Made by a program: the position numbers and the translations under genes. Positions 21,429 to 45,464 of a stretch of DNA of 64,000 nt are shown in pieces (position 1 is the first letter of the stretch; every line of letters begins with the position of its first letter). The notes below the pieces were generated by a model. The model did not search any database. It had not been told where the DNA came from and saw nothing but the letters and a program-made list of their open reading frames with translations. Source of the DNA: Octopus sinensis (lineage: Eukaryota); NCBI RefSeq assembly GCF_006345805.1, contig NC_043005.1, positions 7,502,001 through 7,566,000 on the forward strand. The letters are read 5' to 3'.

Positions 21429-21448
21429 TATATATATATATATATATA

Positions 21449-21730: not shown

Positions 21731-21734
21731 ACTG

Positions 21735-22389: not shown

Positions 22390-22643
22390 CTGTTAACGAA
22401 AGAAAGTTAATAAGAAATTATATAGGGAAGATTTGAGTGATAAAATATCAAATATTCAGAACAAACTGTAATAAGAAATAAGAAGTCAGGGATATTATGA
22501 TAATACAAGTTGGTGAATCCTGATGTTTAATAAAGAAACTATCTTTCATATGTCTTTAATTAATGAGTGTCTTGTGAAGCATAATTGTAAAACTTAGGTT
22601 CTATTTTTTCTTGCATTTTAATTTTATATTTTTCTATATTCAA

Positions 22644-23049: not shown

Positions 23050-23669
23050 TAAGTCAACATTAAATACAAGTTATTTAACAAACACTATTTTATGGAAACA
23101 ATACATACTATGGAGATATGAGAGATAGCAGGATATATGATATACAAAATTATTCTTTGCTTTTCTGATGTCAGTTTCTCATGCATTGTGTTGGTGGGAA
23201 ATAAAATTTGAGTTGTAGGTGCACTAAATTATTTGGGGCTCATTCGTGGTGTGATGGATGTAAAGAGATATGTCTAGCTGGGTAATTTCAGGGCCAGTAT
23301 TATTTATATCAGATGTTCTTCAATACTTGAAGTACATTTGCTGCCAAGAGTAGTCAACATAAAACTGTCAGAGTGCAGCATTTAGCTGATTTAAATTTCC
23401 CAAAGGTTTAATGTGATCCAGACTATTGTGTTATGATGTACAGAGATATACTCAATATTATCTGAGTTAGAGGATTGAGTCTGTAGGTGAGAAAGATGAC
23501 CAGCATATTTGTTGAGTCAGTATGATTGTCAATGATCTAGATGGATATGAGTATTGATAATGCTGAAATAGTAAATAAGCTGACATCAAAGATAATAGCC
23601 TCATAGTGTGAAGAGTCTAAGACACAAAGAGAGCTCTGCATACTGAAATCCACACTTAAAATAAATTTC

Positions 23670-24565: not shown

Positions 24566-24649
24566 TTATTAATTTAAATATTCTCATTCACATGTTTTAG
24601 TGATTCACATTATTATTAAAAATATGGAAAGGATTGTTTCAGTTCTTTA

Positions 24650-25098
<449 letters not shown>

Positions 25099-26350
25099 AA
25101 ATCCTTAAAATCCTTAAAAATGTTTTAGCCCGAAGGCCGCGGCCATGCTAGGGCACCACCACTGAATGAGCTACACTAATTTGTGAATCCACCTCTGATA
25201 CGTGGCACTTGATCAACAAGGGAGTTCGATGCTGCTGCCCGCATCCGCGTCTCCTGTCGTGAGGTAGGTTCATCTGGGACTTCCGACAAGAAGAGATCCA
25301 GTTTAGTTTTAAAGAAACCCACATCCACACCATGTAAGTCTCTCAGGCATTTAGGGAGGATGTTAAAGAGCTGTGGTCCTCTGAAACCCAAGCTGTTGCA
25401 GTATCTGGACCTGTATTTTGATGGTGATGTTGGAATCCTTGGCACCATGCAGTGGCGCCCCATTCTGCGGTTGGGGTAACTTTGAATGCCAAAGTTTGGG
25501 ACAAACCCTCCAGGATTTTCCAGATGTATATCACCGCATATCTCTCCCGCCTCCACTCTAGGGAGAAGAGGTTTAATACCTTCAGTCTTTCCCAGTAGCT
25601 GATATTTTGCATTGAGACGATTTTCTTTGTGTAGCTTCTCTGAATTGCTTCGATTTCTGCTGTTAGTTTTATATTGTGTGGTGACCACAGTTGGGAGCAG
25701 TAGTCCAAGTGGCTGAGGACGAATGTTTTCCATAGGACCATCAGTGTCTCTTTCTCTCTTGTTCTGAAAGTTCGGAGAATCCATCCAGCTAGCCGTCTGC
25801 ATTTTATCACCAGATTAGCAATATGCACTTGGAAAGATGCATCATTGCTCATGCCAATGCCCAGGTCACGCACTGATTTTGACTCAGGGATTGCAATTCT
25901 TCCTGGGCCAGTGTATCCAGTCTGCACGTTGTTTACCTTGTGTGCCAGTAGCGCAGGGCCTGGAACTTACCTGCATTAAACTGCATGTTGTTGTCCTCAG
26001 CCCACCTGTATATGTGTCCAGCTCCTGTTGCAGATGCGCAATATTTTCAGGGTTTGTATTGCATGAGACTTTTGTGTCATCTGCATAGCTAGCAAGGGTG
26101 GTCATCGTAGCAACTGAAGGCATGTCTGAAAGGGCCACTATGAACATCAGTGGCCCCAAGACAGTGCCCTGTGGAACACCGCTTGTTATTTGCGTATCCT
26201 TGGAGGTGGCTCCATTGCACACAACTGCCTGTTTTCTGTCTTTTAGGAAGTTGTGCAGCCACTCTCCAAGTTTTCCGCCTATGCCGAGACCACGCAGTTT
26301 GTGACAGATCATACCATGGTCGACCTTATCAAAGGCTTTTGGAAAGTCGA
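25099..26350 (-). mobile_element. 5'-truncated CR1/L2-group LINE, second family
   Basis: [37 protein letters not shown]; tail (TTTTAAGGA)n; (TA)n on both sides. Confidence 0.9.
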
Positions 26351-26361
26351 TATATATATAC

Positions 26362-26392
<31 letters not shown>

Positions 26393-26403
26393 CATATATA
26401 TAC

Positions 26404-26440
<37 letters not shown>

Positions 26441-26565
26441 CATATATATATACATACATATATATATACACATTATATATATATATATATATATATATTA
26501 TTATAATACACATATATATACATATATATATATACATATATACATATATATATACATATATATAC

Positions 26566-26596
<31 letters not shown>

Positions 26597-26691
26597 CATA
26601 ATATATATATATAATATATACATACATATATATACATATATTATATAATACATATATATATACTCATATATATATACATATATATATATAC

Positions 26692-26742
<51 letters not shown>

Positions 26743-27021
26743 TATATACACATATATATATATATACATATAGATATATATACATATATATCATCATCAT
26801 CATCATCATCGTTTAGCGTCCGCTTTCCATGCTAGCATGGGTTGGACGGGTCAACTGGGGTCTGTGAAGCTGGAAGGCTTCGTCAGGCCCAGTCAGATCT
26901 GGCAGGTGTTTCTACGGCTGGATGCCCTTCCTAACGCCAACCACTCCGCGAGTGTAGTGGGTATTTTTTACGTGCCACCTGCACAGGTGCCAGACAGAGC
27001 TATATATATATACAAAATATT

Positions 27022-27069
<48 letters not shown>

Positions 27070-27140
27070 TATAACATGATATATATATATAAAAATATAG
27101 ATATACATATATATACATATATATATATATACATATATAT

Positions 27141-27198
<58 letters not shown>

Positions 27199-27232
27199 TA
27201 CATATATATATATACATATATATATACATACA
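26351..27232. repeat. (TA)n/(TACA)n microsatellite interrupted by an RTE tail
   Basis: Direct reading. Confidence 0.95.
26790..26999 (-). mobile_element. RTE 3' UTR copy
   Basis: (CAT)n tail plus conserved core. Confidence 0.85.
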
Positions 27233-27234
27233 TT

Positions 27235-27670
27235 TACTCTTTTACTCTCTTTTACTCTTTTTACTTGTTTCAGTCATTTGACTGCGGCGATGCTGGAGCA
27301 CCGCCTTTAGTCGAGCAAATCGACCCCGGGACTTATCCTTTGTAAGCCCAGTACTTATTCTATCGGTCTTTTTTGCCGAAATGCTAAGTGACGGGGACGT
27401 AAACACACCAGCATCGGTTGTCAAGCAATGCTAGGGGGACAAATACAGACACACAAACACACACAGACACACAAAAAAACACAGACATATATATATATAT
27501 ATACATATATACGACAGGCTTCTTTCAGTTTCTGTCTACCAAATCCACTCACAAGGCATTGGTCGGCCCGGGATCTATAGCAGAAGACAATTGCCCAAGA
27601 TGCCACGCAGTGGGACTGAACCCAGAACCATGTTGTTGGTTAGCAAGCTACTTACCACACAGCCACTCAT
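27235..27670 (-). mobile_element. tRNA-derived SINE
   Basis: Head gagtggctgtgtggtaag...ggttcagtccc (A/B boxes); tail ggcggtgctccagcat...cagtcaaatgactgaaac(AAGTAAAAG)n. Confidence 0.88.
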
Positions 27671-27748
27671 ATATATACATACATATATATATATACGTAT
27701 ATATAATATATATATACATACATATATATATATATATATACATACACA

Positions 27749-29578
27749 GGCATGCGAACTGTGTGATTCGGCCACTCTATGGCTCAAATATTGAGACAAC
27801 CTGGCTGAAGACTTTCAGCACCAAGCTCAATTGCTCTATCCTGACATGCAGGGTATCAGCAATGAAATCTATAACAAAACACTCATTGACATTGAAGTCA
27901 AAATTGCTAAACTGGGTGGAAATGAATTGTCGACGTATGGCCTGCCACAAGCATTCAGGTCAGAGTCAAATAGCCTTCCCACTGCTGTCATTCGTGAAAC
28001 AACCTATGACACTCAAGCGCTTTCAAGTACATTGTTGAAAACAAGCCTAAATTACTTCTGGACCAGCTGCAGGCCTACAGAACTATTCTTAACAGTGTAC
28101 GCTAACGCGAGGGACAAATCTTCTTCCTCGATGCTCCTGGAGGAACAGGAAAAACATTTATTATAAAGCTTCTCCTTGCAGAAGTTAGGAAGCATCAGGA
28201 CATTGCAGTAGCTGTAGCCTCCTCTGGCATTGCAGCTACTTTGTTACCCAGTGGCAGGACAGCACACTCAACTTTTAAACTCCCTCTCAATTTAGCAGCA
28301 TCCGAAATGCCTTCATGCAACATCAACAAAAGCTCAGATCAGGGACAAGTACTTAAAATGTGTCATCTAATTGTCTGGGATGAGTGCATTATGGCTCACA
28401 AGGGAGCTTTGGAAGCATTTGATAGAGCCCTGAAAGACATCCGGGACTGTCAGGCTCCAATGGGAGGTGTAACGCTTCTGTTGTCAGGTGATTTCAGGCA
28501 AACTCTTCCTGTCATTCTGAAAGGCACTAGAGCAGATGAAGTTCAAGCATGCCTAAAGTCCTCTACCCTGTGGCATCATGTTACAATCCTCAGTCTCACT
28601 ACTAACATGAGAGCTCAGCTACACGCCGACAAAATGTCCACAAAGTTTGCACAGGACATTTTGACACTTGGTGAAGACAAGATGCCTCTCGATGCTGCAG
28701 GACAAATGGAAGTGTGGTCATTTTCCTCTGTTGTTAATTCTGTAGATGACCTCAAAAACAAAGTCTTTCCCAGCTTCACACAAAACTACCAAAATCACAA
28801 TTGGCTGTGTGAAAGAGCAATATTAGCTCCAAACAACGTCGCTGTTAACAAAATTAATCAACAGCTAATGCATTCTCTTCCCGGCACTATACACACTTAC
28901 AAGTCTGTTGATACAATTCCAGATATAAATGAATTTGTGAACTATCCTCCTGAATTTCTCAATTCACTGGAGCCTCCTGGACTACCTCCACACATATTAG
29001 CACTTAAAGTTCGAACTCTTGTAATGCTACTCCGCAATCTGGAACCACCAAGACTTTGCAATGGAACACGACTGGTGATAAAGAAAATGATGTCACGCGT
29101 TATCGAGGCGATCATTATTTCTGGATGTGGAAAAGGTGATGTCGTCTTTATTCCAAGAATTCCTCTTACTCCATCAGGAGCAGAAATTCCATTTACATTC
29201 AGAAGACTGCAATTCCCCCTTCGTGTCAGCTTTGCCATGTCCATTAACAAATCTCAGGGTCAAACCCTCTCTGTAGCTGGTCTTCTCGTGGAAGAGCCCT
29301 GCTTCTTGCATGGGCAACTGTATGTTGGCTGCTCAAGAGTAGGAACCAAAAGAAACCTTTTTGTATATGCTCCACAAGGAGGTGTTATAATCTCAACAGC
29401 CAGGAGGTATATACATGATCCCCCTTTTTTTTAACAAACTTCATGTACTTTCATGTATTTATATTAATATACATATATATGTGTGTGCATGTGTGTTTGT
29501 GTGTATCCATATATATATAACAGAAAAGTCTAATTCTTCAATTGAATGTAACCAGGCGACGCCGGGTATCTCTATTAG
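27749..29578 (+). mobile_element. Helitron unit 1: 5'-truncated PIF1-like helicase + 3' terminus
   Basis: PGGTGKT Walker A, LPSGRTAHSTFKLP, IVWDEC, GDFRQTLPV, FAMSINKSQGQT, HGQLYVGCSRV; terminal hairpin accaggcgacgccgggt; terminus decayed to ATTAG. Confidence 0.93.
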
Positions 29579-29762
29579 TATATATATATACATAGTCACA
29601 ATGAGGTTATTTAAACCTCTTATATGGATATGTTTATCCAAGATACACTGCATACACATATACATAAAGAGACAGGTACACAAAGAAGGACAAATGTGAT
29701 ATATTAAATGTTTAGGTACATAGTGCTAATGAAATAATATGAAAAAGGGTAATCCAACTTAC

Positions 29763-29834
29763 AAACTATTCAAAGTGGGAAGATCCCTGATTGCCCCTTC
29801 TTGAATAAACGATATTCTATTATGTTCCAGAGAT
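29763..29834 (-). CDS. LRR gene exon 3, copy A
   Basis: tctttgctatAG...|GTAAGT; (L)SLEHNRISFIQEGAIRDLPTLNS(L); 72 nt, phase 2-2. Confidence 0.85.
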
Positions 29835-30360
29835 CTATAGCAAAGAAAGAGATCATAAGAATGTTAGCAAAAGATATTAAACATTAGGCTTAAATAATTA
29901 TTTCTAAGCCGAATGATTGCTTAATAGTGATTGATTAATAGGAAAAATGAAGTCATGCTGACAATTAATAATTCCAAATTGCATATATATTCATAAAAGC
30001 ATAACGTCATTTATTTTGAAGGTGTCATCGTAGCTGTTATCCATTTTCTGTTAAATTGAAAAATGACTTGTCATTTGTTGTGATGTGTTATTCTTGTTTC
30101 CATTGTTAAACATGAATTTTCCAATTTGAATCAAATTATTTTTCTGCCTTAGTTGTTGATTTTCTTATGCTATTCTTTGTCTTAATTAATTTTCATATTA
30201 ATGTAACTGTTGTTGTATTGTTGCAATTCTTTTTTAGTTTAATCTCGAGTGTGTGATTGAATCAGATGTTTTATGACTGGTTATTAAAATAAGAAATATT
30301 GGCCTCATACTCTAAAACATATATGTGTGTCCTTATAAATGACATATTCATATATATACA

Positions 30361-30389
<29 letters not shown>

Positions 30390-30392
<3 letters not shown>

Positions 30393-33300
30393 ACTGAGAA
30401 TGTGTGTCTATCTGTCTGTCTGTGTGTTTCCCTAAAATAGAGAACTACACAACCAATTTCATTCAAATTTTACACATGCCTTACTTAGGGTCCATGTAGT
30501 TTCATGGGCAAAACAAATGTTCAACTTCTTGCTTAGAGCGAGCCCAAAGCAATATCATATCTTCTCCACTATTTCAGTATTACATGTTAAAAGTGAAACA
30601 AAAACATTTCTCCATTTCATGTCAGATGCTTTCACTTTTACAATAAAAATAATAATAACAATTGAATTATATGTAGTAAGTAATAATTAAAATCAAACTA
30701 AAGTATAATATAATCGTAACATAACAAAAGTAAAAATAGCAATTGGTATAAAATTGCATCAATGACCTGAACTTGAATAAGTGGTTTCACATGAATGAGA
30801 ATAAATTAAAAATAAAATTTAAGTGCAGAAATGGAATAGTCCAGATGGATAAAAAAAAATTAAATTAAAGAAAAGACTATTGTCTATAAAGTATACAATG
30901 TAGAGAAAAAAGATTTGAACACCTGGAGGAAAGCACCTTCGAAAAGTGTCTTGGTGTGACTATGAATGATATCTAACCAGAGGCGGTAAATTCGCCAGAA
31001 TAGAAGCAAGATTCGAGTCAATGGAGCATGCAAGGCAGTACTAGACTCGAACTTGCAAAGTGGAAATATTTTATTTTTACGTTTATATCTGGGACGTAGG
31101 ACGTCCCGGATAAAAATGAAAAATGTCCCCCCTCCCAGCAGTAGAGGTAGGCTGGATTGTAGCCACACTTCTATACAAGAGGGAGGACAAGATACAATTG
31201 ATCGAAATTGCAAGAGACGGGCTTACAATTCCAGTCTATTATATATTTTGAGTATTGTTATCACTAGCGATATCAAGATATAACTTTGTATTTTGTATTT
31301 TATGTGTAGATGTATATATATAGATGTACATGTAATATGTACACATATATATACACATATATACATGCACTAGCACTATGACCCGGCAACGACGGGTCAT
31401 AATGCTAGTATATATATATATATATATCTTTATATATATAAAACTGAGAATGTGTGTCTGTCTGTCTGTGCGTTTCCCTAAAACTTGAGAACTACACAAC
31501 CAATTCCAATCAAATTTTACACATGCCTTACTTAGGGTCCCTGTAGGTTCATGGGCGAAAAAAATGTTCAACTTCTGGCCTAGAGCGAGCCCATAACAAT
31601 ATCATATCTTCTCCACTATTTCAGTATTACATGTTAAAAGGGAAACAAAAACGTTTCTCTATTTTATGTCAGATACTTTCACTTTAACAATAAAAATAAT
31701 AATAACAATTGAATTATATGTAGTAAGTAATAATTAAAATCAAACTAAAGTAACATGACAAAAGTAAAATAGCAATTGGTATAAAATTGCATCAATGACT
31801 TGAACTTGAATAAGTGGTTTCACATGAATGGGAATAAATTAAAAATAAAATTAGCGTGCAGAAATGGAATAGTCCAGATGGATAAAAAAAATTAAATTAA
31901 AGAAAAGACTATTGTCTATAAAGTATACAATGTAGAGAAAAAAGATTTGAACACCTGGAGGAAAGCACCATCGAAAAGTGTCTTGGTGCGACTATGAAAG
32001 ATATCTAACCAGAAGTGGTAAATTTGCCACAATAGAAGCAAGGTTCGAGTCAACGGAGCGTTCAAAGGAGTACTCGACTTGAACATGTGAAGTGGAAATA
32101 TTTTATTTTTACCTTTATATCTGGGACGTAGGACGTCCTGGAAAAATAATTTTAATGGCTCCCCCCCCCCGAAGTAGAGGTAGGCTGGATTGTAGCCACA
32201 CTTCTATACAAGAGGGAGGACAAGATACAATTGATCGAAATTACAAGAGACAGGCTAACAATTCCAGTCTGTTATATATTTTGAGTATTGTTATCACTAG
32301 CGATATCAAGATATAACCTTGTATTTTGTGTTTTATATGTAGATGTATATATATAGATGTACATGTAATATGTACACATATATACACATATATACATGCA
32401 CTAGCACTATGACCCGGCAACGACGGGTCTTTAATGCTAGTATATATATAAGACTGAGAATGTGTGTCTGTCTGTCTGTGTGTTTCCCTAAAACTTGAGA
32501 ACTACACAACCACTTTCATTCAAATTTTACATATGCCTTACTTAAGGTCCGTGGAGTGTCATCGGCAAAAAAATCTTAACTTTTTCCCTAGGGCGAACCC
32601 ACAGCAATATCATATCTTCTCCACTATTTCAGTATTACGTGTTAAAAGTGAAACAAAAACATCTCTCTTTTGTAATGCACACACTTTCACTATTAAAGTG
32701 AAAGTATTATATAACGGGGACGAACCATTAACAAGTGGTCATCCATTTTGCTAGAAGATCCGCTATGGTCTTATATGCTACGCCACTGGTTTTCAATTCA
32801 TATTAATCAAATTAATATTCAATTTTTCACCCTTATTATGTGTGTGTGTGTGTGTGTGTATTAGCAATTCGTATAAAATTGCATCAATGACTTGAACTTG
32901 AATAAGTGGTTTCACATAAATGGGGATAAATTAAAAAGATTTGTTATTATTATTATTACTGTTTGACTATTGTACTCACTGTTGGTTCCCCGTCGAGGAA
33001 ACGTTGTGTTGCATATCTTAAATAATTGTAAAGCGTAACCCTACCCCTTTCGGAGAAGGGGCTTTGGTTATTGTTTAAAAATTGAATTGTGCCTCTGTTT
33101 GGGGAAATTGACAATATTTTCACCGTCTTTACGGTAGCATTTTTGTTAAAATGCCTTCGATAGAAGAAAGTCCAAAAATGAATTTCGCTGCAGCCATACA
33201 CTTCTATACAAGAGGGAGGACAAGATCCAATTAATCGAAATTGCAAGAGACGGGCCTACAATTCCAGTCTGTTATATATTTTGAGTATTATCACTAGCGA

Positions 33301-33611
33301 TATCAAGATATAACTTTGTATTTTGTATTTTATGTGTAGATGTATCTATATAGAATGGTTGTATACTGTCAATCTAACACGAACGTGACAGTAGGGGGGT
33401 TCACCACCGCTGTTTAGCCCTAGGAAGCATCGACGCCTCCTGATGGCTTTGGCACATTTTTCCTGTGTCCTAATATACATTTTTAGATTGACAGTATACA
33501 ACCATTCTATCGCCCCACCACCGTACATGTCTACGAGAGATTTAAAAATTTAGTATTTCTGATGTATATATATAGATGTACATGTAATATGTACACATAT
33601 ATATACACATA
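30390..33611 (+). mobile_element. Tandem non-autonomous Helitrons, family A (30390-31408, 31427-32440, chimeric third copy)
   Basis: ~1 kb units starting TC(TTTATATATATAAAACTGAG) or a TA-eroded version, ending with hairpin tatgacccg-gcaacga-cgggtcata + CTAG, separated by (TA)n. Confidence 0.85.
33351..33509. mobile_element. Small MITE, perfect 26-bp TIR (TA ends), nested in a Helitron A copy
   Basis: tagaatggttgtatactgtcaatcta / tagattgacagtatacaaccattcta. Confidence 0.85.
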
Positions 33612-33661
33612 TATACATGCATAATATAACTACCCATACACACATACTCACACACACATAC

Positions 33662-33810
33662 ATAGGGGCAGGTGTGGCTGTGTGGTAACAAACTACGTTC
33701 CAAACACATGGTCCTGGGTTCAGTCCCACTGTGTGGTGACTTGGCATGTGTCTTCTGCTGTAGCCTCAGACCAACAAAAGCCTTCTCAGTGGATTTTGTA
33801 TATATATACA
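33662..33810 (+). mobile_element. Diverged SINE head (same family)
   Basis: gtgtggctgtgtggtaac...gggttcagtcccactgtgtgg. Confidence 0.7.
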
Positions 33811-33899
33811 GGCATACATACATATATATACTTGCATACGTACATATTCAGCATAAACACTCTACCACTACAACTAATAACTGTTGGGAACACTTTCAA

Positions 33900-36800
33900 A
33901 CCTGCCTTACATTCGAACCGGAATCTCAACGCCCGAGTTTTCCATCTGAAGTTAATCTCTCTCATGGAACTCATACAAAAAGGGCAAGTCTTTGGGCCCA
34001 TACAATGTGACATGTACACAATCGAGTGGCAAAAAAGGGCCTTCCACATGCTCATATCCTGCTTTGGCTCTCAACGAAGATCAATTCCAATGACATCGAC
34101 AAGATAATCTCTGCAGAGCTTCCTGATCCATCTTTAGCCAAAGAACTATACGAAATAGTTAAAGCAAACATGGTACATGGTCCATGTGGGCCTGGATTCA
34201 ACATAAACACACCATGCTTGAAGGACAGCATATGTTCAAAAAGATTTCCAAGGAGGTTCCTACAAGAAACTCAGACAGTTGCTGATGGGTATCCATCGTA
34301 CAGACGCAGAAAACCAGAAGATGGAGGATTCACAGCAACTATCGGACAGCACGATATTGATAATAGATGGATTGTTCCATACTGCCCACTCCTGTCAAAG
34401 ACTTTCAATGCCCACATCAACGTTGAGTTTCGAAACTCCGTTAAATCCATCAAGTACGTTTGCAAATTTGTAAACAAGGGTTCTGACGCTGCAATGTTTG
34501 GACTTCAACAAGAATACTGCCAGGATGGAGTGACGCATTATCAGGTAGGACGGTACATAAGTAGCAACGAGGCTTTCTGGCGCATCTTTGGCTTTCCAAT
34601 TCATTAACGACACCCCGCCATTCAACAGCTTGCAGTGCACCTGGAAAAGGGTCAAAGAGTGTACTTCACCGATGCTAATGCTTCTCTGTTGGCAGAGGAA
34701 CCAAGGGATAGCACACTCACTGCATTCTTCAAGCTTTGTCAAGTGGATCCATTCACTCAAACCTTGCTGTATCCACAGATTCCATCGTACTACACTTGGA
34801 ATGGAAAAAAAATGGGCCCCACGGAAAGCAGGTCAAAATGCTCATGGATACCCTGGCATTAAGTTTCACACTTGCCTTGGGCGAGTATACACAGTGCATC
34901 CCACTCAACAAGAGTGCTTCTACCTTTGTCTACTACTGCATGAGGTCAGAAGGCCAACGTATTTCCAGGCTCTAAAAACCGTCCATGGACATGTCTGCAC
35001 AACATACAGAGAAGCCTGATATCGACAAGGTCTGTTAGAAGATGGTGCACAATGGGATGCAACTTTAGGAGAGGCTGCTTTATCACAATCACCTAAAAGT
35101 CTTAGGGCACTATTTGCAGTATTACTACAAGCATGCGGACTGTGTGATCCGGCCACTCTATGGCTCAAATATAGAGACAACCTGGCTGAAGACTTTCAGC
35201 GCCAAGCTCAATTGCTCTATCCTGACATGCAGGGTATCAGCAATGTAATCTATAACAAAACACTCATTGACATTGAAGTCAAAATTGCTAAACTGGGTGG
35301 AAATGAATTGTCGACGTATGGCCTGCCACAAGCATTCAGGTCAGGGTCAAATAGCCTTCTCACTGCTGTCATTCGTGAAACAACCTACGACACTCAAGCG
35401 CTTTCAAGTACATTGTTGAAAACAAGCCTAAATTACTTCCGGACCAGCTGCAGGCCTACAGAACTATCCTTAACAGTGTACGCCAACGCGAGGGACAAAT
35501 CTTCTTCCTCGATGCTCCTGGAGGGACAGGAAAAACATTTATTATAAAGCTTCTCCTTGCAGAAGTTAGGAAGCATCAGGACATTGCAGTAGCTGTAGCC
35601 TCCTCTGGCATTGCAGCTACTTTGTTACCCAGTGGCAGGACAGCACACTCAACTTTTAAACTCCCTCTCAATTTAGCAGCATCCGAAATGCCTTCATGCA
35701 ACATCAACAAAAGCTCAGATCAGGGACAAGTACTTAAAATGTGTCATCTAATTGTCTGGGATGAGTGCACTATGGCTCACAAGGGAGCTTTGGAAGCATT
35801 AGATAGAGCCCTGAAAGACATCCGGGACTGTCAGGCTCCAATGGGAGGTGTAACGCTTCAGTTGTCAGGTGATTTCAGGCAAACTCTTCCTGTCATTCTG
35901 AAAGGCACTAGAGCAGATGAAGTCCAAGCATGCCTAAAGTCCTCTACCCTGTGGCATCATGTTACAATCCTCAGTCTCACTACTAACATGAGAGCTCAGC
36001 TACACGGCGACAAAATGTCCACAAAGTTTGCACAGGACATTTTAACACTTGGTGAAGACAAGATGCCTCTCGATGCTGCAGGACAAATGGAAGTGTGGTC
36101 ATTTTCCTCTGTTGTGAATTCTGTAGATGACCTCAAAAACAAAGTCTTTCCCAGCTTCACACAAAACTACCAAAATCACAATTGGCTGTGTGAAAGAGCA
36201 ATATTAGCTCCAAAAAACGTTGCTGTTAACAAAATTAATCAACAGCTAATGCATTCTCTTCCCGGCACTATACACACTTACAAGTCTGTTGATACAATTC
36301 CAGATATAAATGAATTTGTGAACTATCCTCCTGAATTTCTCAATTCACTGGAGCCTCCTGGACTATCTCCACACATAATAGTACTTACAGTGGGAACTCT
36401 TGTAATGCTACTCCGCAATCTGCAACCACCAAGACTTTGCAATGGAACACGACTGGTGATAAAGAAAATGATGTCACACGTTATCGAGGCGATCATTATT
36501 TCTGGATGTGGAAAAGGTGATGTCGTCTTTATTCCAAGAATTCCTCTTGCTCCATCAGGAGCAGAAATTCCATTTACATTCAGAAGACTGCAATTCCCCC
36601 TTCGTGTCAGCTTTGCCATGTCCATTAACAAATCTCAGGGTCAAACCCTCTCTGTAGCTGGTCTTCTCGTGGAAGAGCCCTGCTTCTTGCATGGGCAACT
36701 GTATGTTGGCTGCTCAAGAGTAGGAACCAAAAGAAACCTTTTTGTATATACCCACAAGGAAAAACAAGGAACATTGTTTACAACGAGGTGTTATAATCTC

Positions 36801-36983
36801 AACAGCCAGGAGGTATATACACGATCCCCTTTTTTTTTAACAAACTTCATGTACTTTCATGTATTTATATTAATATACATATATATGTGTGTGCGTGTGT
36901 GTTTGTGTGTATCCATATATATATAACAGAAAAGTCTAATTCTTCAATTGAATGTAACCGGGCAACGCCAGGTATCTCTGCTA

Positions 36984-36984
<1 letters not shown>
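33900..36984 (+). mobile_element. Helitron unit 2: Rep (HUH) C-part + PIF1-like helicase, frameshifted
   Basis: ARVFHLKL, IEWQKRGLPHAHILLWL (HUH), KYVCKFVNKG, then helicase ORF 35622-36926; 3' hairpin accgggcaacgccaggt + CTAG. Confidence 0.95.
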
Positions 36985-37018
<34 letters not shown>

Positions 37019-37186
37019 GTCACAATGAGGTTATTTAAACCTCTTATATGGATATGTTTATCCAAGATACACTGCATACACATATACATAAAGAGACAGG
37101 TACACAAAGAAGGACAAATATGATATATTAAATGTTTAGGTACATAGTGCTAATGAAATAATATGAAAAAGGGTAATCCAACTTAC

Positions 37187-37258
37187 AAACTATTCAAAGT
37201 GGGAAGATCCCTGATTGCTCCTTCTTCAATATACGATATCGTATTATGTTCCAGAGAT
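37187..37258 (-). CDS. LRR gene exon 3, copy B (divergent)
   Basis: tctttgctatAG...|GTAAGT; (L)SLEHNTISYIEEGAIRDLPTLNS(L); 72 nt, 5 nt differ from copies A/C. Confidence 0.85.
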
Positions 37259-37808
37259 CTATAGCAAAGAAAGAGATCATAAGAATGTTAGCAAAAGATA
37301 TTAAACATTAGGCTTAAATAATTAATTCTAAGCCGAATGATTGCTTAATAGTGATTGATTAATAGGAAAAATGAAGTCATGCTGACAATTAATAATTCCA
37401 AATTGCATATATATTCATAAAAGCATAACGTCATTTATTCTGAAGGTGTCATCGTAGCTGTTATCCATTTTCTGTTAAATTGAAAAATGACTTGTCATTT
37501 GTTGTGATGTGTTATTCTTGTTTCCATTGTTAAACATGAATTTTCCAATTTGAATCAAATTATTTTTCTGCCCTAGTTGTTGATTTTCCTATGCTATTCT
37601 TTGTCTTAATTAATTTTCATATTAATGTAACTGTTGTTGTATTGTTGCACTTCTTGTTTAGTTTAATCTCGAGTGTGTGATTGAATCAGATGTTTTATGA
37701 CTGGTTATTAAAATAAGAAATATTGGCCTCATACTCTAAAACATATATGTGTGTCCTTATAAATGACATAATCATATATATACATATATGTATATACATA
37801 TATGTATA

Positions 37809-37867
<59 letters not shown>

Positions 37868-37905
37868 ATATATATATATATATATTATATATATATATAT
37901 ATATA

Positions 37906-39013
37906 TAAAACTGAGAATGTGTGTCTATCTGTCTGTCTGTGTGTTTCCCTAAAATAGAGAACTACACAACCAATTTCATTCAAATTTTCCACATGCCTTA
38001 CTTAGGGTCCATGTAGTTTCATGGGCAAAACAAATGTTCAACTTCTTGCTTACAGCGAGCCCAAAGCAATATCATATCTTCTCCACTATTTCAGTATTAC
38101 ATGTTAAAAGGGAAACAAAAACACTTCTCTATTTTATGTCAGATGCTTTCACTTTTACAATAAAAATAATAATAACAATTGAATTATATGTAGTAAGTAA
38201 TAATTAAAATCAAACTAAAGTATAATATAATCATAACATAACAAAAGTAAAAATAGCAATTGGTATAAAATTGCATCAATGACTTGAACTTGAATAAGTG
38301 GTTTCACATGAATGGGAATAAATTAAAAATAAAATTAGCGTGCAGAAATGGAATAGTCCAGATGGATACTAAAAAATTGAATTAAAGAAAAGACTATTGT
38401 CTATAAAGTATACAATGTAGAGAAAAAAGATTTGAACACCTGGAGGAAAGCACCATCGAAAAGTGTCTTGGTGCGACTATGAATGATATCTAACCAGAGG
38501 CGGTAAATTCGCCAGAATAGAAGCAAGATTCGAGTCAATGGAGCATGCAAGGCAGTACTAGACTCGAACTTGCAAAGTGGAAATATTTTATTTTTACCTT
38601 TATATCTGGGACGTAGGACGTCCCGGATAAAAATGAAAAATGTCCCCCCTCCCAGAAGTAGAGGTAGGCTGGATTGTAGCCACACTTCTATACAAGAGGG
38701 AGGACAAAATACAATTGATCGAAATTGCAAGAGACGTGCTTACAATTCCAGTCTATTATATATTTTGAGTATTGTTATCACTAGCAATATCAAGATATAA
38801 CTTTGTATTTTGTATTTTATGTGTAGATGTATATATATAGATGTACATGTAATATGTACACATATATATACACATATATACATGCACTAGCACTATGACC
38901 CGGCAACGACGAGTCATAATGCTAGTATATATATATATATCTTTATATATATAAAACTGAGAATGTGTGTCTGTCTGTCTGTCTGTGCGTTTCCCTAAAA
39001 CTTGAGAACTACA
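37906..39013 (+). mobile_element. Non-autonomous Helitron family A (37906-38925) + 5' stub (38940-39013)
   Basis: Same termini and body as 30390-31408. Confidence 0.85.
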
Positions 39014-39020
39014 AGCCTAA

Positions 39021-39957
39021 ATTGGTGAAGACAAGATGCCTCTCGATGCTGCAGGACAAATGGAAGTGTGGTCATTTTCCTCTGTTGTTAATTCTGTAGA
39101 TGACCTCAAAAACAAAGTCTTTCCCAGCTTCACACAAAACTACCAAAATCACAATTGGCTGTGTGAAAGAGCAATATTAGCTCCAAACAACATCGCTGTT
39201 AACAAAATTAATCAACAGCTAATGCATTCTCTTCCCGGCACTATACACACTTACAAGTCTGTTGATACAATTCCAGATATAAATGAAGTTGTGAACTATC
39301 CTCCTGAATTTCTCAATTCACTGGAGCCTCCTGGACTACCTCCACACATATTAGCACTTACAGTGGGAACTCTTGTAATGCTACTCCGCAATCTGGAACC
39401 ACCAAGACTTTGCAATGGAACACGACTGGTGATAAAGAAAATGATGTCACACGTTATCGAGGCGATCATTATTTCTGGATGTGGAAAAGGTGATGTCGTC
39501 TTTATTCCAAGAATTCCTCTTGCTCCATCAGGAGCAGAAATTCCATTTACATTCAGAAGACTGCAATTCCCCCTACGTGTCAGCTTTGCCATGTCCATTA
39601 ACAAATCTCAGGGTCAAACCCTCTCTGTAGCTGGTCTTCTCATGGAAGAGCCCTGCTTCTTGCATGGGCAACTGTATGTTGGCTGCTCAAGAGTAGGAAC
39701 CAAAAGAAACCTTTTTGTATATACCCACAAGGAAAAACAAGGAACGTTGTTTACAACGAGGTGTTATAATCTCAACAGCCAGGAGGTATATACATGATCC
39801 ACTTTTTTTTTTAACAAACTTCATGTACTTTCATGTATTTATATTAATATACATATATATGTGTGTGCGTGTGTGTTTGTGTGTATCCATATATATATAA
39901 CAGAAAAGTCTAATTCTTCAATTGAATGTAACCGGGCAACGCCAGGTATCTCTGCTA

Positions 39958-39958
<1 letters not shown>
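39021..39958 (+). mobile_element. Helitron unit 3: helicase C-terminal half + 3' terminus
   Basis: ORF 39036-39797 nearly identical to units 1 and 2; same hairpin + CTAG end. Confidence 0.93.
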
Positions 39959-40002
<44 letters not shown>

Positions 40003-40177
40003 ATACATAGTCACAATGAGGTTATTTAAACCTCTTATATGGATATGTTTATCCAAGATACACTGCATACACATATACATAAAGAGAAAGGTACACAAAG
40101 AAGGACAAAAGTGATATATTAAATGTTTAGGTACATAGTGCTAATGAAATAATATGAAAAAGGGTAATCCAACTTAC

Positions 40178-40249
40178 AAACTATTCAAAGTGGGAAGATC
40201 CCTGATTGCCCCTTCTTGAATAAACGATATTCTATTATGTTCCAGAGAT
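40178..40249 (-). CDS. LRR gene exon 3, copy C (inside Helitron array)
   Basis: tctttgttatAG...|GTAAGT; (L)SLEHNRISFIQEGAIRDLPTLNS(L); 72 nt, identical to the copy at 29763. Confidence 0.85.
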
Positions 40250-40779
40250 CTATAACAAAGAAAAAGATCATAAGAATGTTAGCAAAAGATATTAAACATT
40301 AGGCTTAAATAATTAATTCTAAGCCGAATGATTGCTTAATAGTGATTGATTAATAGGAAAAATGAAGTCATGCTGACAATTAATAATTCCAAATTGCATA
40401 TATATTCATAAAAGCATAACGTCATTTATTCTGAAGGTGTCATCGTAGCTGTTATCCATTTTCTGTTAAATTGAAAAATGACTTGTCATTTGTTGTGATG
40501 TGTTATTCTTGTTTCCATTGTTAAACATGAATTTTCCAATTTGAATCAAATTATTTTTCTGCCCTAGTTGTTGATTTTCTTATGCTATTCTTTGTCTTAA
40601 TTAATTTTCATATTAATGTAACTGTAGTTGTATTGTTGCAATTCTTTTTTAGTTTAATCTCGAGTGTGTGATTGAATCAGATGTTTTATGACTGGTTATT
40701 AAAATAAGAAATATTGGCCTCATACTCTAAAACATATATGTGTGTCCTTATAAATGACATATTCATATATATACATATA

Positions 40780-40849
<70 letters not shown>

Positions 40850-40857
40850 ATATATTA

Positions 40858-41879
40858 TATAACTGAGAATGTGTATCTATCTGTCTGTCTGTGTGTTTCC
40901 CTAAAACTTGAGAACTACACAACCAATTTCATTCAAATTTTACACATGCCTTACTTAGGGTCCATGTAGTTTCATGGGCAAAACAAATGTTCAACTTCTT
41001 GCTTAGAGCGAGCCCAAAGCAATATCATATCTTCTCCACTATTTCAGTATTACATGTTAAAAGGGAAACAAAAACACTTCTCTATTTTATGTCAGATGCT
41101 TTCACTTTTACAATAAAAATAATAATAACAATTGAATTATATGTAGTAAGTAATAATTAAAATCAAACTAAAGTATAATATAATCGTAACATAACAAAAG
41201 TAAAAATAGCAATTGGTATAAAATTGCATCAATGACTTGAACTTGAATAAGTGGTTTCACATGAATGGGAATAAATTAAAAATAAAATTAGCGTGCAGAA
41301 ATGGAATAGTCCAGATGGATACTAAAAAATTGAATTAAAGAAAAGACTATTGTCTATAAAGTATACAATGTAGAGAAAAAAGATTTGAACACCTGGAGGA
41401 AAGCACCATCGAAAAGTGTCTTGGTGCGACTATGAATGATATCTAACCAGAGGCGGTAAATTCGCCAGAATAGAAGCAAGATTCGAGTCAATGGAGCATG
41501 CAAGGCAGTACTAGACTCGAACTTGCAAAGTGGAAATATTTTATTTTTACGTTTATATCTGGGACGTAGGACGTCCCGGATAAAAATGAAAAATGTCCCC
41601 CCTCCCAGCAGTAGAGGTAGGCTGGATTGTAGCCACACTTCTATACAAGAGGGAGGACAAAATACAATTGATCGAAATTGCAAGCGACGGGCTTACAATT
41701 CCAGTCTGTTATATATTTTGAGTATTGTTATCACTAGCGATATCAAGATATAACTTTGTATTTTGTATTTTATGTGTAGATGTATATATATATAGATGTA
41801 CATGTAATATGTACACATATATATACACATATATACATGCACTAGCACTATGACCCAGCAACGACGGGTCATAATGCTA

Positions 41880-41915
<36 letters not shown>

Positions 41916-42855
41916 TTATATATATAAAACTGAGAATGTGTGTCTGTCTGTCTGTGCGTTTCCCTAAAACTTGAGAACTACACAACCAATTCCATTCAAA
42001 TTTTACACATGCCTTACTTAGGGTCCATGTAGGTTCATGGGCAAAACAAATGTTCAACTTCTGGCCTAGAGCGAGCCCATAGCAATATCATATCTTCTCC
42101 ACTATTTCAGTATTACATGTTAAAAGGGAAACAAAAACGTTTCTCTATTTTATGTCAGATACTTTTACTTTAACAATAAAAATAATAGTAACAATTGAAT
42201 TATATGTAGTAAGTAATAATTAAAATCAAACTAAAGTAACATGACAAAAGTAAAATAGCAATTGGTATAAAATTGCATCAATGACTTGAACTTGAATAAG
42301 TGGTTTCACATGAATGGGAATAAATTAAAAATAAAATTAGCGTGCAGAAATGGAATAGTCCAGATGGATAAAAAAAATTAAATTAAAGAAAAGACTATTG
42401 TCTATAAAGTATACAATGTAGAGAAAAAAGATTTGAACACCTGGAGGAAAGCACCATCGAAAAGTGTCTTGGTGCGACTATGAAAGGTAGCTAATCAGAG
42501 GCAGTAAATTCGCCAGAATAGAAGCAAGGTTCGAGTCAACAGAGCGTTCAAAGGAGTACTCGACTTGAACTTGTGAAGTGGAAATATTTTATTTTTACTT
42601 ATACATCTGGGACGTAGGACGTCCTGGAAAAAAAATTTTAATGGCTCCCCCCTTCCGAAGTAGAGGTAGGCTGGATTGTAGCCACACTTCTGTACAAGAG
42701 GGAGGACAAGATACAATTGATCGAAATTACAAGAGACAGGCTAACAATTCCAGTCTGTTATATATTTTGAGTATTGTTATCACTAGCGATATCAAGATAT
42801 AACCTTGTATTTTGTATTTTATATGTAGATGTATATATATAGATGTACATGTAAT
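40858..42855 (+). mobile_element. Two tandem non-autonomous Helitrons, family A (40858-41880, 41913-42855)
   Basis: Same sequence family; the second copy stops before its terminus where a SINE begins. Confidence 0.85.
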
Positions 42856-42864
42856 AGATGTACA

Positions 42865-43262
42865 GGCGCAGGAGTGGCTGTGTGGTAAGTAGCTTGCTAA
42901 CCAACCACATGGTTCCGGGTTCAGTCCCACTGTGTGGCATCTTGGGCAAGTGTCTTCTGCTATAGCCCCGGGCCGACCAATGCCTTGTGAGTGGATTTGG
43001 TAGACGGAAACTGAAAGAAGCCTGTCGTATATATGTATATATATATCTATATATATGTATGTGTGTGTGTTTGTGTGTCTGTGTTTGTCCCCCTAGCATT
43101 GCTTGACAACCGATGCTGGTGTGTTTATGTCCCTGTCACTTAGCAGTTCGGCAAAAAGAGACCGGTAGAATAAGTACTGGGCTTACAAAGAATAAGTCCC
43201 GGGGTCGACTAAAGGCGGTGCTCCAGCACGGCTGCAGTCAAATGACTGAAATAAGTGAAAGA
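42865..43262 (+). mobile_element. tRNA-derived SINE (same family)
   Basis: About 7 differences in the 155-nt head versus the 27235 copy; same tail. Confidence 0.88.
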
Positions 43263-43976
43263 GAAAAAAATATTTATGTATATCTACGTATATACATGTA
43301 TATTTATATATATATGCGTGTATGCGTGTATATAAATATATGCATTCATGAGTCTGTGTTTGTATGCATATATATATTTTTCAGATAAAAGAAATATAAA
43401 TATAACTATACAAATTTATGTATATGTATGTATATACGTGTGTATGTATATGTGTATATATATATGTACAGGTACATATATGAATATGTGTGTGTATATA
43501 TGTACATATATATATATACACACACACACATATATATAATAAATTAAATTATTTGCCTTAAAAAAACTGCCTTCTCATATTCCATTACACATGCTTCTCA
43601 AAAGCTCTTTTACTGGACCTTTCCACAGACACTTTCATACTATAAATTAGTAACCACACTCACTAAACACTCTTCAAATATTCATTCTTCATAGAATCAA
43701 AGGTTTTTTAATGTCTTTCATCACTGCATGATGAAGCATTCGCAGCCAGACTCCTTACAAATTGTACAATACTTTCTTAAAATACGTAAGAACAAACCAG
43801 ATCTTTGAATCCTGAATGTACAATTTGGTAGAAGTGTCACAGCCAGAAAACCTTTCTCGTTGGTGTATGACGAACGCTGATCTTAGGTACACAACTTAAC
43901 AAATGCAAAGGACACAAATGTGCACTCATTTGTATATACTCAAACACAATCACACACACACAAAATATAATGATAA

Positions 43977-45264
43977 ATCAGGTCATCCCATAAGTTCTGT
44001 CCGATTTTATCTTTTTTAAAATTGAATGAAATTTAATAGTATTTTAGACTGTCTGATGGAATTAAAAATTATTTTTATGCATTTGTGTACATTTAAACTA
44101 ATTAAATATTATTTTACAGAATAATAGAATTAAAATTTCTTTGATTAAAACCCCTTTCTAACGTGGAAGTATCCAAAGAACATATTTAAGGCACATAATG
44201 CTTTTTGAGTACAAAAAATGGAAACTCCGCAGCTGAAGCGACTTGAAACATACACTCAGTTTATAGGAAAGAACGCTTGAATGAAAGAACTTGCAGAAGA
44301 TGGTTTGCAAAATTCAGAAGTGGAGATTTCAGCCTTGAAGATGAAGATCAAACAGGACGTCCAGTTGAGTTTGATGATAAGCTCCTTGGGGCATTACTTG
44401 AAGAAAATCCTGCATTATCAGTTGAAGAATTGGCAATAAAGTTTAGTTCAAACCATACAACTGTTTGTAGTCATCTTCAACAACTTGGAAAGGTTCCTAA
44501 ACTTGGAAAATGGATGACTCATGAATTGTCCGAAAGCAACTGCAAATCCCGAGTTGACATCTGCTCTTCTCTCCAGTCTCGCAAACTTATTTCACCCTTT
44601 TTGGATAGACTTGTGATGAAAAATGGATCTTCTATCGAAATGTTAAATGTCGTAAACAGTGGCTTGGTAAAAGGGGGAAAAGCTCAGCCACAACTGAGAA
44701 GGGAACTTCATGGTAAAAAGGTTCTTCTCTGTATCTGGTGTGATTACAAAGGAGTAATTCACTTTGAATTGTTACCACCTAATGCAACAATCAATTCTCA
44801 AGTCTACTGTCAGCAAATTGAGCGTTTGAAACAAGCTTTAAAGAAAAAAAGACCCACTTTAGTGAATCGAAAAGAGTGATGTTTCATCAGGACAATGTGC
44901 AACCCCACACCACAAAGATCACATCACAGAAGATCGAAGAGCTTGGTTGGAAAAAAATTCCTCATCCACCTTATTCTCCCAACGTTGCTCCTTCAGACTA
45001 CCATTTGTTTTGTAGTTTACAGAATCATTTGGGGGACATAACTTTCGAAAGTCAGGAGGGGGTCGATTCTGATATTTCAGAGTTCTTTGCTTTGAAACCA
45101 AAAGAGTTTTATATTGATGGGATTAAAAAGCTTGTAAATAGATGGAAGGAAGTCATAGATAATCAAGGAAAGTACATTGATGACTAAATTTCAATTAAAT
45201 ATAACATTTTATCACTTGTTTTCTTTATTCAAAATTTGGACAGAACTTATGGAATGACTTGATA
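43977..45264 (+). mobile_element. mariner (D,D34D) transposon, full length ~1.29 kb, frameshifted
   Basis: ~28-bp TIRs (atcaggtcatcccataagttctgtcc / ggacagaacttatggaatgacttgat); KWMTHEL, HQDNVQPH...YSPNVAPSD with 34 residues between the two Asp. Confidence 0.93.
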
Positions 45265-45392
45265 GAATAATTGACAAATAGAGACAAATAGATAAAGAAA
45301 GTGAGACAGTGAGGTCTGCAGAAAGAGAAGCAGAGTATATTTAATATTTACATTGTTAATGAAATTATATCACAAATTGTAATCCAACTTAC

Positions 45393-45464
45393 AATTCTTT
45401 TAAATTCAGAAGGGTTCTGATTGACCAAAGTTGAAAAAAGCTGACGTCATTATAAGTCAGGTTC
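45393..45464 (-). CDS. LRR gene exon 2 (72-nt LRR)
   Basis: tttattatAG|g AAC CTG...GAA TT|GTAAGT; peptide (L)NLTYNDVSFFQLWSIRTLLNLKE(L); phase 2-2. Confidence 0.88.

What the first reader, a model, noticed from the sequence alone, without database searches (positions are those of the whole stretch)
27749..42860. Helitron tandem array multiplies an LRR exon in place inside its host gene
Seen: three units of [Rep/helicase Helitron 3' end with hairpin+CTAG] - [~185 nt intron] - [72-nt LRR exon on the opposite strand, intact AG/GT] - [~560 nt intron] - [1-3 non-autonomous Helitrons with their own hairpin+CTAG]. All three exon copies are phase 2-2 and stop-free, so each can add one LRR to the protein. 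Established: Helitrons capture 3' flanking DNA by reading through their terminator, and symmetric exons tolerate duplication. Inference: read-through from the autonomous terminator to the next non-autonomous terminator, or repeat-mediated tandem duplication seeded by these Helitrons, amplified a host exon in cis and lengthened the LRR solenoid. This would be a transposon-driven repeat-number generator for a receptor-like gene rather than the usual dispersed gene-fragment capture.
Basis: partly seen in the sequence, partly recalled or inferred. Interest (0 to 1): 0.92.

Follow-up and report, generated by a model that had tools for sequence, protein, structure and literature searches.

The report
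LRR exon triplicated by local duplication
A 72-base exon encoding one leucine-rich repeat, in a probable octopus-lineage gene, sits three times in a row inside an intron full of Helitron transposons, but the one readable duplication junction shows an ordinary DNA copying or repair slip, not Helitron transposition.

Summary
Three blocks (A 27749-, B ~33913-, C 39022-42864) each hold a 5'-truncated RepHel Helitron 3' part, 184 nt of intron, a 72-nt phase 2-2 LRR exon on the minus strand with AG/GT, ~556 nt of intron, and 1-3 ~1-kb non-autonomous Helitrons ending in hairpin+CTAG. The host gene is a chain of nine 72-nt one-LRR exons, and the joined frame stays open.

The Helitron-driven mechanism is not supported where it can be tested. 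Blocks B and C are a simple 2.97-kb head-to-tail duplication. Its junction joins position ~80 of a non-autonomous copy to the middle of the helicase ORF. The join runs through a 13-nt insertion templated from 615 bp upstream, with 3-nt and 2-nt microhomologies. That is a template-switch or end-joining signature and lies at no Helitron terminus. No autonomous piece has the left end that transposition requires.

81% of the array is Helitron DNA, so breakpoints inside it are expected by chance. An older exon-plus-intron duplication in the same gene shares no Helitron sequence. The older A event is unresolved.

Exon B carries 5 clustered substitutions (p~1e-3), a hint of selection or conversion. 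No transcript or ortholog evidence exists. This is an ordinary exon-level tandem duplication in a transposon-rich intron.

The parts
27749..29578 (+). Block A: 5'-truncated RepHel Helitron 3' part (helicase only), ending in a weak hairpin plus TTAG (mutated CTAG) followed by T
   Evidence: PIF1 and Pif1_2B Pfam hits. Homology to B starts at 27749 = 35129, and a microsatellite lies upstream. Terminus motif at 29552-29578.
29763..29834 (-). LRR exon copy A (72 nt, phase 2-2, AG/GT), identical to copy C
30391..31408 (+). Non-autonomous Helitron copy A1 (N1 type); its 5' edge is blurred in (TA)n; 3' strong hairpin plus CTAG followed by T
31427..32440 (+). Non-autonomous Helitron copy A2 (N2 type), with canonical A|TC 5' end and hairpin plus CTAG|T 3' end; ~7% diverged from N1
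32441..33620 (+). Diverged third non-autonomous copy (N3*), interrupted by a ~160-bp insert bounded by a 28-nt inverted repeat (33350-33510, MITE-like) and lacking the terminal hairpin/CTAG. A SINE head follows at 33664-33800.
33913..36984 (+). Block B: longest RepHel Helitron remnant (from about the Rep two-His motif GLPHAHILLWL to the 3' end). It is frameshifted and 5'-truncated, and ends in hairpin plus CTAG|T.
   Evidence: tblastn to RepHel proteins, Pfam PIF1, three-frame translation, terminus at 36958-36984
37187..37258 (-). LRR exon copy B, with 5 substitutions relative to A and C within 23 bp (R>T, F>Y, Q>E and one synonymous)
37908..38925 (+). Non-autonomous Helitron copy B1 (N1 type)
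38940..39013 (+). ~80-nt 5' stub of an N2-type copy, duplicated together with the block. This is the left side of the B/C junction.
   Evidence: identical to the starts of A2 and C2
39011..39023 (+). B/C duplication junction: 13-mer ACAAGCCTAAATT templated from 35422-35434 (also 28041-28053), with microhomology ACA on the left and TT on the right
   Evidence: (only three occurrences in the window)
39022..39958 (+). Block C: Helitron 3' part starting in the middle of the helicase ORF (= 36049 in B), ending in hairpin plus CTAG|T
40178..40249 (-). LRR exon copy C
40860..41880 (+). Non-autonomous Helitron copy C1 (N1 type)
41913..42864 (+). Non-autonomous Helitron copy C2 (N2 type), cut ~95 nt before its 3' end where a tRNA-like SINE head begins
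5780..45464 (-). The part of the host gene visible in the window: nine 72-nt one-LRR exons at 45393-45464, 40178-40249, 37187-37258, 29763-29834, 22318-22389, 16800-16871, 12040-12111, 9598-9669 and 5780-5851

Best explanation
A large intron of an LRR gene in a probable octopod had been colonised by a RepHel Helitron, whose 3' end lies 184 nt from an LRR exon, and by a short run of non-autonomous Helitrons 556 nt on the exon's other side. The intron then underwent two local segmental duplications that happened to carry the exon.

The younger event is shown. It is a 2.97-kb head-to-tail duplication running from the middle of the helicase ORF to ~80 nt into the second non-autonomous copy. It was made by a replication or repair error, either serial template switching or polymerase-theta-type end joining. 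The junction holds a 13-nt stretch copied from 615 bp upstream and is flanked by 3-nt and 2-nt microhomologies.

The older event is inferred. It copied at least 4.6 kb, with a spacing of ~7.4 kb, and created block A. Its left edge is a new adjacency of microsatellite to Helitron interior. Its right edge is unresolved. I think it most likely arose the same non-transpositional way.

On this reading the Helitrons are passengers. At most, their hairpins and adjoining (TA)n tracts are breakage-prone spots.

Because the exon is symmetric (phase 2-2) and its splice sites were copied intact, the gene can now encode three near-identical LRRs where it had one. Whether it does so is not shown.
For: - Block structure and collinearity.
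- B/C junction: the N2 stub plus filler plus helicase interior. The filler is a 13-mer found elsewhere only inside the Helitron, at 35422 and 28041. The chance of a 13-mer match in 128 kb of both strands is about 0.002 (my calculation).
- The ~80-nt N2 start is present on both sides of block C, which marks a duplication rather than an insertion.
- All autonomous pieces lack a 5' end, and the left terminal sequence is required for Helitron transposition (PMC4778049).
- Divergence is BC 1.55%, AC 1.79% and AB 2.26%. The Helitron and N1 segments give the topology (A,(B,C)).
- The same gene holds an older exon-plus-intron duplication (22125-22583 against 16604-17044, 75% identity) with no Helitron DNA inside the shared segment.
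- The Helitron family is scattered through the other introns too, and 81% of the array is Helitron-derived.
Against: - The older event cannot be reconstructed without one extra deletion or truncation under any model.
- If block A ends at 32440, its right edge coincides with a Helitron CTAG|T terminus inside (TA)n, as a read-through product would.
- The autonomous-type terminator hairpin is weak, which by the Helraiser data favours bypass.
- There are no reads, orthologous locus or transcripts to confirm the array or the use of the exons.
Confidence: 0.7

Rival explanations
1. The older copy (block A) was made by Helitron read-through. A then-complete autonomous element bypassed its own weak terminator and that of N1, stopped at the N2 terminator, and re-inserted about 1.5 kb upstream in a (TA)n tract. 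Its 5' part was later deleted.
For: Block A could end exactly at the CTAG|T of A2 (32440) inside (TA)n. The autonomous-type hairpin is weak. Read-through transduction occurs in ~12% of Helraiser events, and more often without a hairpin (PMC4778049).
Against: Block A begins inside the Helitron with no left end, so a later deletion must be added. It requires bypass of the strong N1 hairpin (z -9). The same locus shows a demonstrably non-transpositional duplication. Whether N3* was already next to N2 before the event cannot be seen, because C2 is truncated.
Confidence: 0.12
2. The older event was unequal homologous crossing-over between directly repeated Helitron copies (non-autonomous or autonomous) that flanked the exon. 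Deletions then trimmed the outer copies.
For: Directly repeated ~1-kb copies at 85-93% identity lie in the interval. This is the classic substrate for repeat-mediated exon duplication.
Against: No hybrid repeat at a junction is visible. The left copy lacks the upstream repeat that this model predicts, so a further deletion is needed. The B/C event was certainly not homology-mediated.
Confidence: 0.12
3. The array is an assembly artefact, either haplotype copies placed in tandem or repeat over-expansion.
For: It is a repeat-rich region with many microsatellites, and no read data are available.
Against: The copies differ by 1.5-2.3% plus indels and have different boundaries. The B/C junction has a unique templated insertion. 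There are no Ns in the window. Three copies with nested boundaries do not look like a two-haplotype merge.
Confidence: 0.06
4. The duplication is real but has no effect. The extra copies are skipped pseudo-exons, or the whole LRR chain is an unexpressed or decaying gene.
For: No ortholog-level or transcript-derived protein appears in two searches of a ~15-billion-protein collection (best 30-41% identity). At ~1% divergence per copy, intact frames are expected even without selection.
Against: All nine exons keep canonical splice sites and an open frame. Exon B carries a significant cluster of mostly amino-acid-changing substitutions, which is not the pattern of uniform neutral decay.
Confidence: 0.35

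Closest known systems
Intragenic tandem exon duplication by microhomology-mediated template switching or end joining (FoSTeS/MMBIR, or polymerase-theta joining with templated insertions)
   Same: Head-to-tail copy of a few kb, breakpoints in non-homologous sequence, 2-3 nt microhomologies, and a short insertion copied from nearby. A symmetric exon is carried along.
   Different: Here it lies in an invertebrate LRR gene and almost all the duplicated DNA is Helitron-derived.
Helitron gene-fragment capture by terminator read-through (maize, bats; Helraiser experiments, PMC4778049)
   Same: A Helitron 3' end with a weak hairpin lies next to host DNA, and further Helitron terminators lie downstream. 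Helitrons abut each other 3' end to 5' end, as described for bat genomes.
   Different: The copies are local and tandem rather than dispersed. The units do not begin at a left end. One junction is demonstrably not a terminus. The exon stays inside its own gene.
Expansion of LRR domains by duplication and shuffling of single-repeat symmetric exons (for example Ectocarpus ROCO/LRR loci, PMC3341825)
   Same: One LRR per exon, exons of equal length and the same phase, and repeat number changed by exon-level duplication. This gene also shows an older event of the same kind.
   Different: This is an animal gene with phase 2 introns and 72-nt exons. Only one recent triplication is seen, and there are no population or expression data.
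Helitron-associated tandem copy-number variation of whole genes (Populus KCS cluster, PMC13253262, title and abstract only)
   Same: A tandem duplication sits in a Helitron-rich interval and is credited to Helitrons on grounds of proximity.
   Different: That case concerns whole genes. Here it is a single exon, and the junction evidence here points away from Helitron action.

Membership tests
Helitron (canonical, RepHel-encoding) | Encodes a Rep (HUH) nuclease fused to a PIF1-like SF1B helicase | tested here: met
   PIF1 and Pif1_2B Pfam domains in A, B and C. In B, the two-His motif GLPHAHILLWL and tblastn similarity to a protein carrying Helitron_like_N plus PIF1 extend back to ~33913. Pfam itself did not call Helitron_like_N on the fragment. 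The ORF is frameshifted and N-terminally truncated.
Helitron (canonical, RepHel-encoding) | 3' end CTRR preceded by a short GC-rich hairpin, inserted with T on the 3' side | tested here: met
   CTAG|T in B and C, and TTAG in A. The motif occurs 10 times against 0.01 expected. The hairpin is weak for the autonomous type and strong for the non-autonomous type.
Helitron (canonical, RepHel-encoding) | 5' end TC preceded by A (left terminal sequence) | tested here: not met
   All three autonomous-type pieces start internally. The N2-type non-autonomous copies do show A|TCTTTATA. The pieces are therefore Helitron remnants and not complete elements.
Helitron 3' transduction (read-through capture) as the origin of the exon copies | Each copied unit starts at a Helitron left end and stops at a downstream terminator | tested here: not met
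   Block C starts at helicase-interior position 36049-equivalent, after an N2 stub and a templated filler. Block A starts at the 35129-equivalent interior position.
Helitron 3' transduction (read-through capture) as the origin of the exon copies | The new copy is inserted at an A|T site without duplicating target DNA | tested here: not met
   For B/C, ~80 nt of N2 are present on both sides of the new block. For A this is inconclusive.
Helitron 3' transduction (read-through capture) as the origin of the exon copies | Composite copies dispersed elsewhere in the genome | not testable with these tools
   No cephalopod genome is searchable here, and the window holds no further copy of the exon region.
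Microhomology-mediated or template-switch tandem duplication | Direct head-to-tail copies whose junction lies in non-homologous sequence with short microhomology | tested here: met
   ACA (3 nt) and TT (2 nt) at the two switch points.
Microhomology-mediated or template-switch tandem duplication | A short insertion at the junction templated from nearby sequence | tested here: met
   The 13-mer ACAAGCCTAAATT equals 35422-35434, 615 bp upstream of the re-entry point, and occurs only three times in the window.
Leucine-rich repeat protein gene with one repeat per exon | LRR consensus, equal exon length, same intron phase, open joined frame | tested here: met
   Nine 72-nt exons, all phase 2-2. LRR_8 E=3e-47. 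The subfamily is unknown, because no non-LRR part of the gene lies in the window and no ortholog was found.

The most novel reading that the evidence does not exclude
Helitron termini (strong hairpins) and the (TA)n tracts they sit in act as recurrent replication-stalling sites. These sites repeatedly trigger template-switch duplications of the adjacent one-LRR exons. On this reading the transposon landscape, rather than the transposase, works as a repeat-number generator for this receptor-like gene. The clustered amino-acid changes in exon copy B would then mark a new repeat that is expressed and diversifying.
Probability: 0.1. Interest if true: 0.6.

Novelty: new member of a known kind. Interest (0 to 1): 0.3.

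Why it matters
The case shows how an LRR domain gains repeats one exon at a time, and one duplication junction is preserved well enough to read the mechanism. It is also a caution. In a genome where introns are mostly transposon DNA, finding transposon ends around a duplicated exon does not show that the transposon did the copying. If transcripts include the extra exons, and the changes in copy B prove adaptive, this would be a dated example of receptor-surface growth in a cephalopod, a few million years old on a rough clock. It does not open a new class of mechanism.

Tried and rejected
- Ortholog or transcript search with the joined LRR chain. The word-index search and the full HMMER search gave only generic LRR similarity (41% identity or less), and names of the nearest hits were uninformative. 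The gene family and exon usage could not be settled.
- Exact-ORF look-up of the block B helicase in public assemblies found nothing on record, so there is no independent assembly of the locus.
- Species identification. The best named hit for the helicase is Octopus bimaculoides at 74%. For the LINE ORF it is Argonauta hians at 53%. The source is probably an octopod whose proteome is not in the database.
- tblastn of distant LRR proteins, and a motif scan for an N-terminal Cys-rich cap, found no further exons of the gene in the window.
- Rfam and tRNA scans found nothing.
- Gene conversion from the neighbouring exons as the source of exon B's changes was rejected. Those exons are only 57-62% identical to it and would have brought in many more differences.
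- Simple one-step tandem duplication for A versus B/C was rejected, because the truncated copy lies on the wrong side. Every model needs one more deletion or truncation (reasoned).
- An inversion between the inverted SINE-containing copies that bracket the array (27001-27720 and 42822-43514) was rejected. The exons inside have the same orientation as those outside, and the two copies are only 81-85% identical.
Full report
**Source and setting.** The window is AT-rich eukaryotic DNA, crowded with (TA)/(CA)-type microsatellites and transposons: LINE reverse transcriptases, a mariner and tRNA-like SINE heads. The best named relatives of its transposon proteins are from octopods. The helicase matches Octopus bimaculoides at 74% (an unnamed database entry reaches 82%), and the LINE ORF matches Argonauta hians at 53%. 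No near-identical protein exists in the collection. The source is therefore probably an octopod whose proteome is not in the database. Recently active Helitron families are documented in Octopus vulgaris (PMC13282606).

Self-comparison and alignments resolve three blocks on the plus strand.
- Block A (27749-~33620): a 1.83-kb Helitron 3' part, 184 nt, the exon (29763-29834, minus strand), 556 nt, then non-autonomous copies A1, A2 and a diverged, interrupted third copy.
- Block B (~33913-39013): a ~3.07-kb Helitron remnant that reaches back to the Rep two-His motif but is frameshifted and lacks its 5' third or more. It is followed by the exon (37187-37258), copy B1 and an ~80-nt stub of an N2-type copy.
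- Block C (39022-42864): 0.94 kb of Helitron 3' part, the exon (40178-40249), copy C1, and copy C2 cut ~95 nt short by a SINE head.

PIF1 helicase domains are present in all three blocks. The shared terminal motif (GC-rich hairpin, 7-nt spacer, CTAG, then T) occurs ten times in the window against 0.01 expected. The non-autonomous hairpins are strong (z -5 to -9) and the autonomous-type hairpin is weak (z about -1.2 to -1.4). N2-type copies start with a canonical A|TC inside a (TA)n tract directly after the preceding CTAG. N1 and N2 differ by ~7%. They are therefore separate insertions stacked end to end, an arrangement described for bat Helitrons (PMC4778049).

**The host gene.** Nine 72-nt exons lie on the minus strand between 45464 and 5780. 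Each encodes one 24-residue LRR, each has a polypyrimidine-AG acceptor and nearly always a GTAAGT donor, and all are in phase 2-2. Joined, they give an open 215-residue frame that hits LRR_8 at E=3e-47. Nothing in the window outside the LRR chain could be assigned to the gene. Two searches of the large protein collections found only generic LRR similarity of 41% or less. The gene is thus structurally convincing, but it is unannotated in the searched collections and there is no transcript evidence.

**How the younger duplication arose (shown).** If 36049-39021 is removed, B plus C becomes collinear with A. B and C are therefore a simple 2.97-kb head-to-tail duplication. Its junction reads: N2 start ...GAGAACTACA, then AGCCTAAA, then TTGGTGAAGAC..., which is the interior of the helicase ORF. 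The ~80-nt N2 start lies on both sides of block C. A Helitron insertion would not produce that. The filler is templated: the 13-mer ACAAGCCTAAATT occurs elsewhere in the window only at 35422 (B) and 28041 (A), inside the Helitron and 615 bp upstream of the re-entry point. It overlaps the flanks by 3 nt (ACA) and 2 nt (TT). By my calculation a chance 13-mer match in 128 kb has probability about 0.002. Microhomology plus a locally templated insertion is the recognised signature of serial template switching or of polymerase-theta-type end joining. That attribution rests on established knowledge and not on a paper read here. It is not a Rep-mediated event and not homologous recombination between repeats.

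**The older duplication (inferred).** A matches B/C over at least 27749-32376, with a spacing of ~7.4 kb. The new adjacency is at A's left edge, where a microsatellite meets the Helitron interior. In B the same point is continuous Helitron coding sequence. A's right edge could be the CTAG of A2 at 32440, or any point up to ~33913. This cannot be decided, because C2 is truncated. Three models were considered: a pasted copy by template switching, unequal crossing-over, and Helitron read-through with local reinsertion. Each of them needs one further deletion or truncation. I favour a non-transpositional origin for three reasons:
- the locus demonstrably makes such errors;
- A has no left end, and the left end is required for Helitron transposition (PMC4778049);
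- read-through would have had to bypass the strong N1 hairpin.

Read-through is not excluded, and I give it about 0.12.

**Are the Helitrons causal?** Helitron-derived DNA makes up 81% of the array, so two breakpoints falling inside it has a chance probability of about 0.65. The same family has termini in several other introns of this gene. The gene also contains an older exon-plus-intron duplication (22125-22583 against 16604-17044, 75% identity over ~470 bp) whose shared segment holds no Helitron DNA. This gene therefore gains exons with or without Helitrons. A looser role, with hairpins and (TA)n tracts acting as stalling or breakage sites, is possible but untested.

**Ages and an oddity.** Over the 2.74-kb common core, substitutions are BC 1.55%, AC 1.79% and AB 2.26%. 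The Helitron and N1 segments support (A,(B,C)). On the octopus repeat calibration quoted in PMC13282606 (JC distance 0.09 at about 25 Myr), this is roughly 2-3 Myr. That is a rough figure and rests on my assumption that the repeat calibration applies to these copies.

Against that topology, the exon is identical in A and C, while B carries five differences within 23 bp: AGA>ACG, TTT>TAT, CAA>GAA and GGG>GGA, giving R>T, F>Y, Q>E and one silent change. With A and C agreeing, these changes are most simply derived in B. Five of 28 B-specific sites falling in the 72-nt exon has p=7e-4, and any such 23-bp cluster has p=1.2e-3. Diversifying selection on an expressed new repeat, a short conversion tract from an unseen paralog, or a single multi-nucleotide mutation would each explain it. 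The neighbouring exons are too different to be the donor.

**Artefact?** The copies differ by 1.5-2.3% plus indels. The blocks have nested and different boundaries. One junction has a unique templated insertion, and the window contains no Ns. I put assembly error at about 0.06, but only spanning reads can exclude it.

**Verdict.** The headline mechanism, Helitron-driven amplification, fails where it can be tested and is the less economical reading where it cannot. What remains is a well-preserved example of a known process: tandem duplication of a symmetric one-repeat exon in a transposon-filled intron. The substitution cluster in one copy is a side observation worth following up. I referred no steps.

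Noticed in passing
window 37187-37258 (sites equivalent to 29795-29817 in block A): Exon copy B has five substitutions within 23 bp (three amino-acid changes and one silent change), while its flanks differ by ~1%. The enrichment has p~1e-3. The cause could be selection, gene conversion or a multi-nucleotide mutation.
   Followed up: partly
window 22125-22583 vs 16604-17044: An older tandem duplication of an LRR exon with ~200 bp of intron on each side (75% identity; the exons match at 57/72 nt). No Helitron sequence lies in the shared segment, and different Helitron pieces begin just beyond it.
   Followed up: partly
window 20956-20982 (+), 22644-22670 (-), 48477-48503 (+), 62654-62680 (+); 17108-17359 (-): Further termini of a third Helitron subfamily (…CCGAGCAACGCCGGGCGATACTGCTAG), and a reversed non-autonomous copy, lie in other introns of the same gene. 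The first two belong to a 93%-identical inverted pair (22625-22897 vs 20998-20731).
   Followed up: partly
window 27001-27720 and 42822-43514: Two ~700-bp copies of a tRNA-like SINE plus microsatellite, 81-85% identical and in inverted orientation, bracket the whole array with their heads facing it. A third SINE head (33664-33800) follows the truncated N3* copy. This may be coincidence, or the AT-rich Helitron 3' region may be a preferred SINE target.
   Followed up: partly
window 33350-33510: A ~160-bp insert with perfect 28-nt terminal inverted repeats (MITE-like) interrupts the third non-autonomous Helitron copy.
   Followed up: no
window 44247-45184 (+): A mariner/Mos1-type transposase remnant (HTH_48 and Transposase_1 domains, split over two frames) lies in the intron just upstream of exon copy C.
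   Followed up: partly
window 56400-60500 (+); also 18002-18733 (-), 25179-26663 (-): A LINE with a 724-codon open endonuclease-RT frame (best named relative in Argonauta hians, 53%), preceded by a Gln/Thr/Pro-rich ORF. Fragments of related LINEs lie elsewhere in the window.
   Followed up: partly
window 50995-53324 (+): A run of long open frames (303, 231, 101 and 186 codons) with no Pfam match. It is probably an unclassified mobile element.
   Followed up: no
window 29372 region vs 36760-36780 / 39733-39753: Block A has a ~25-nt deletion near the end of the helicase ORF relative to B and C, which changes the C-terminal reading frame. A's terminal CTAG is also mutated to TTAG.
   Followed up: no
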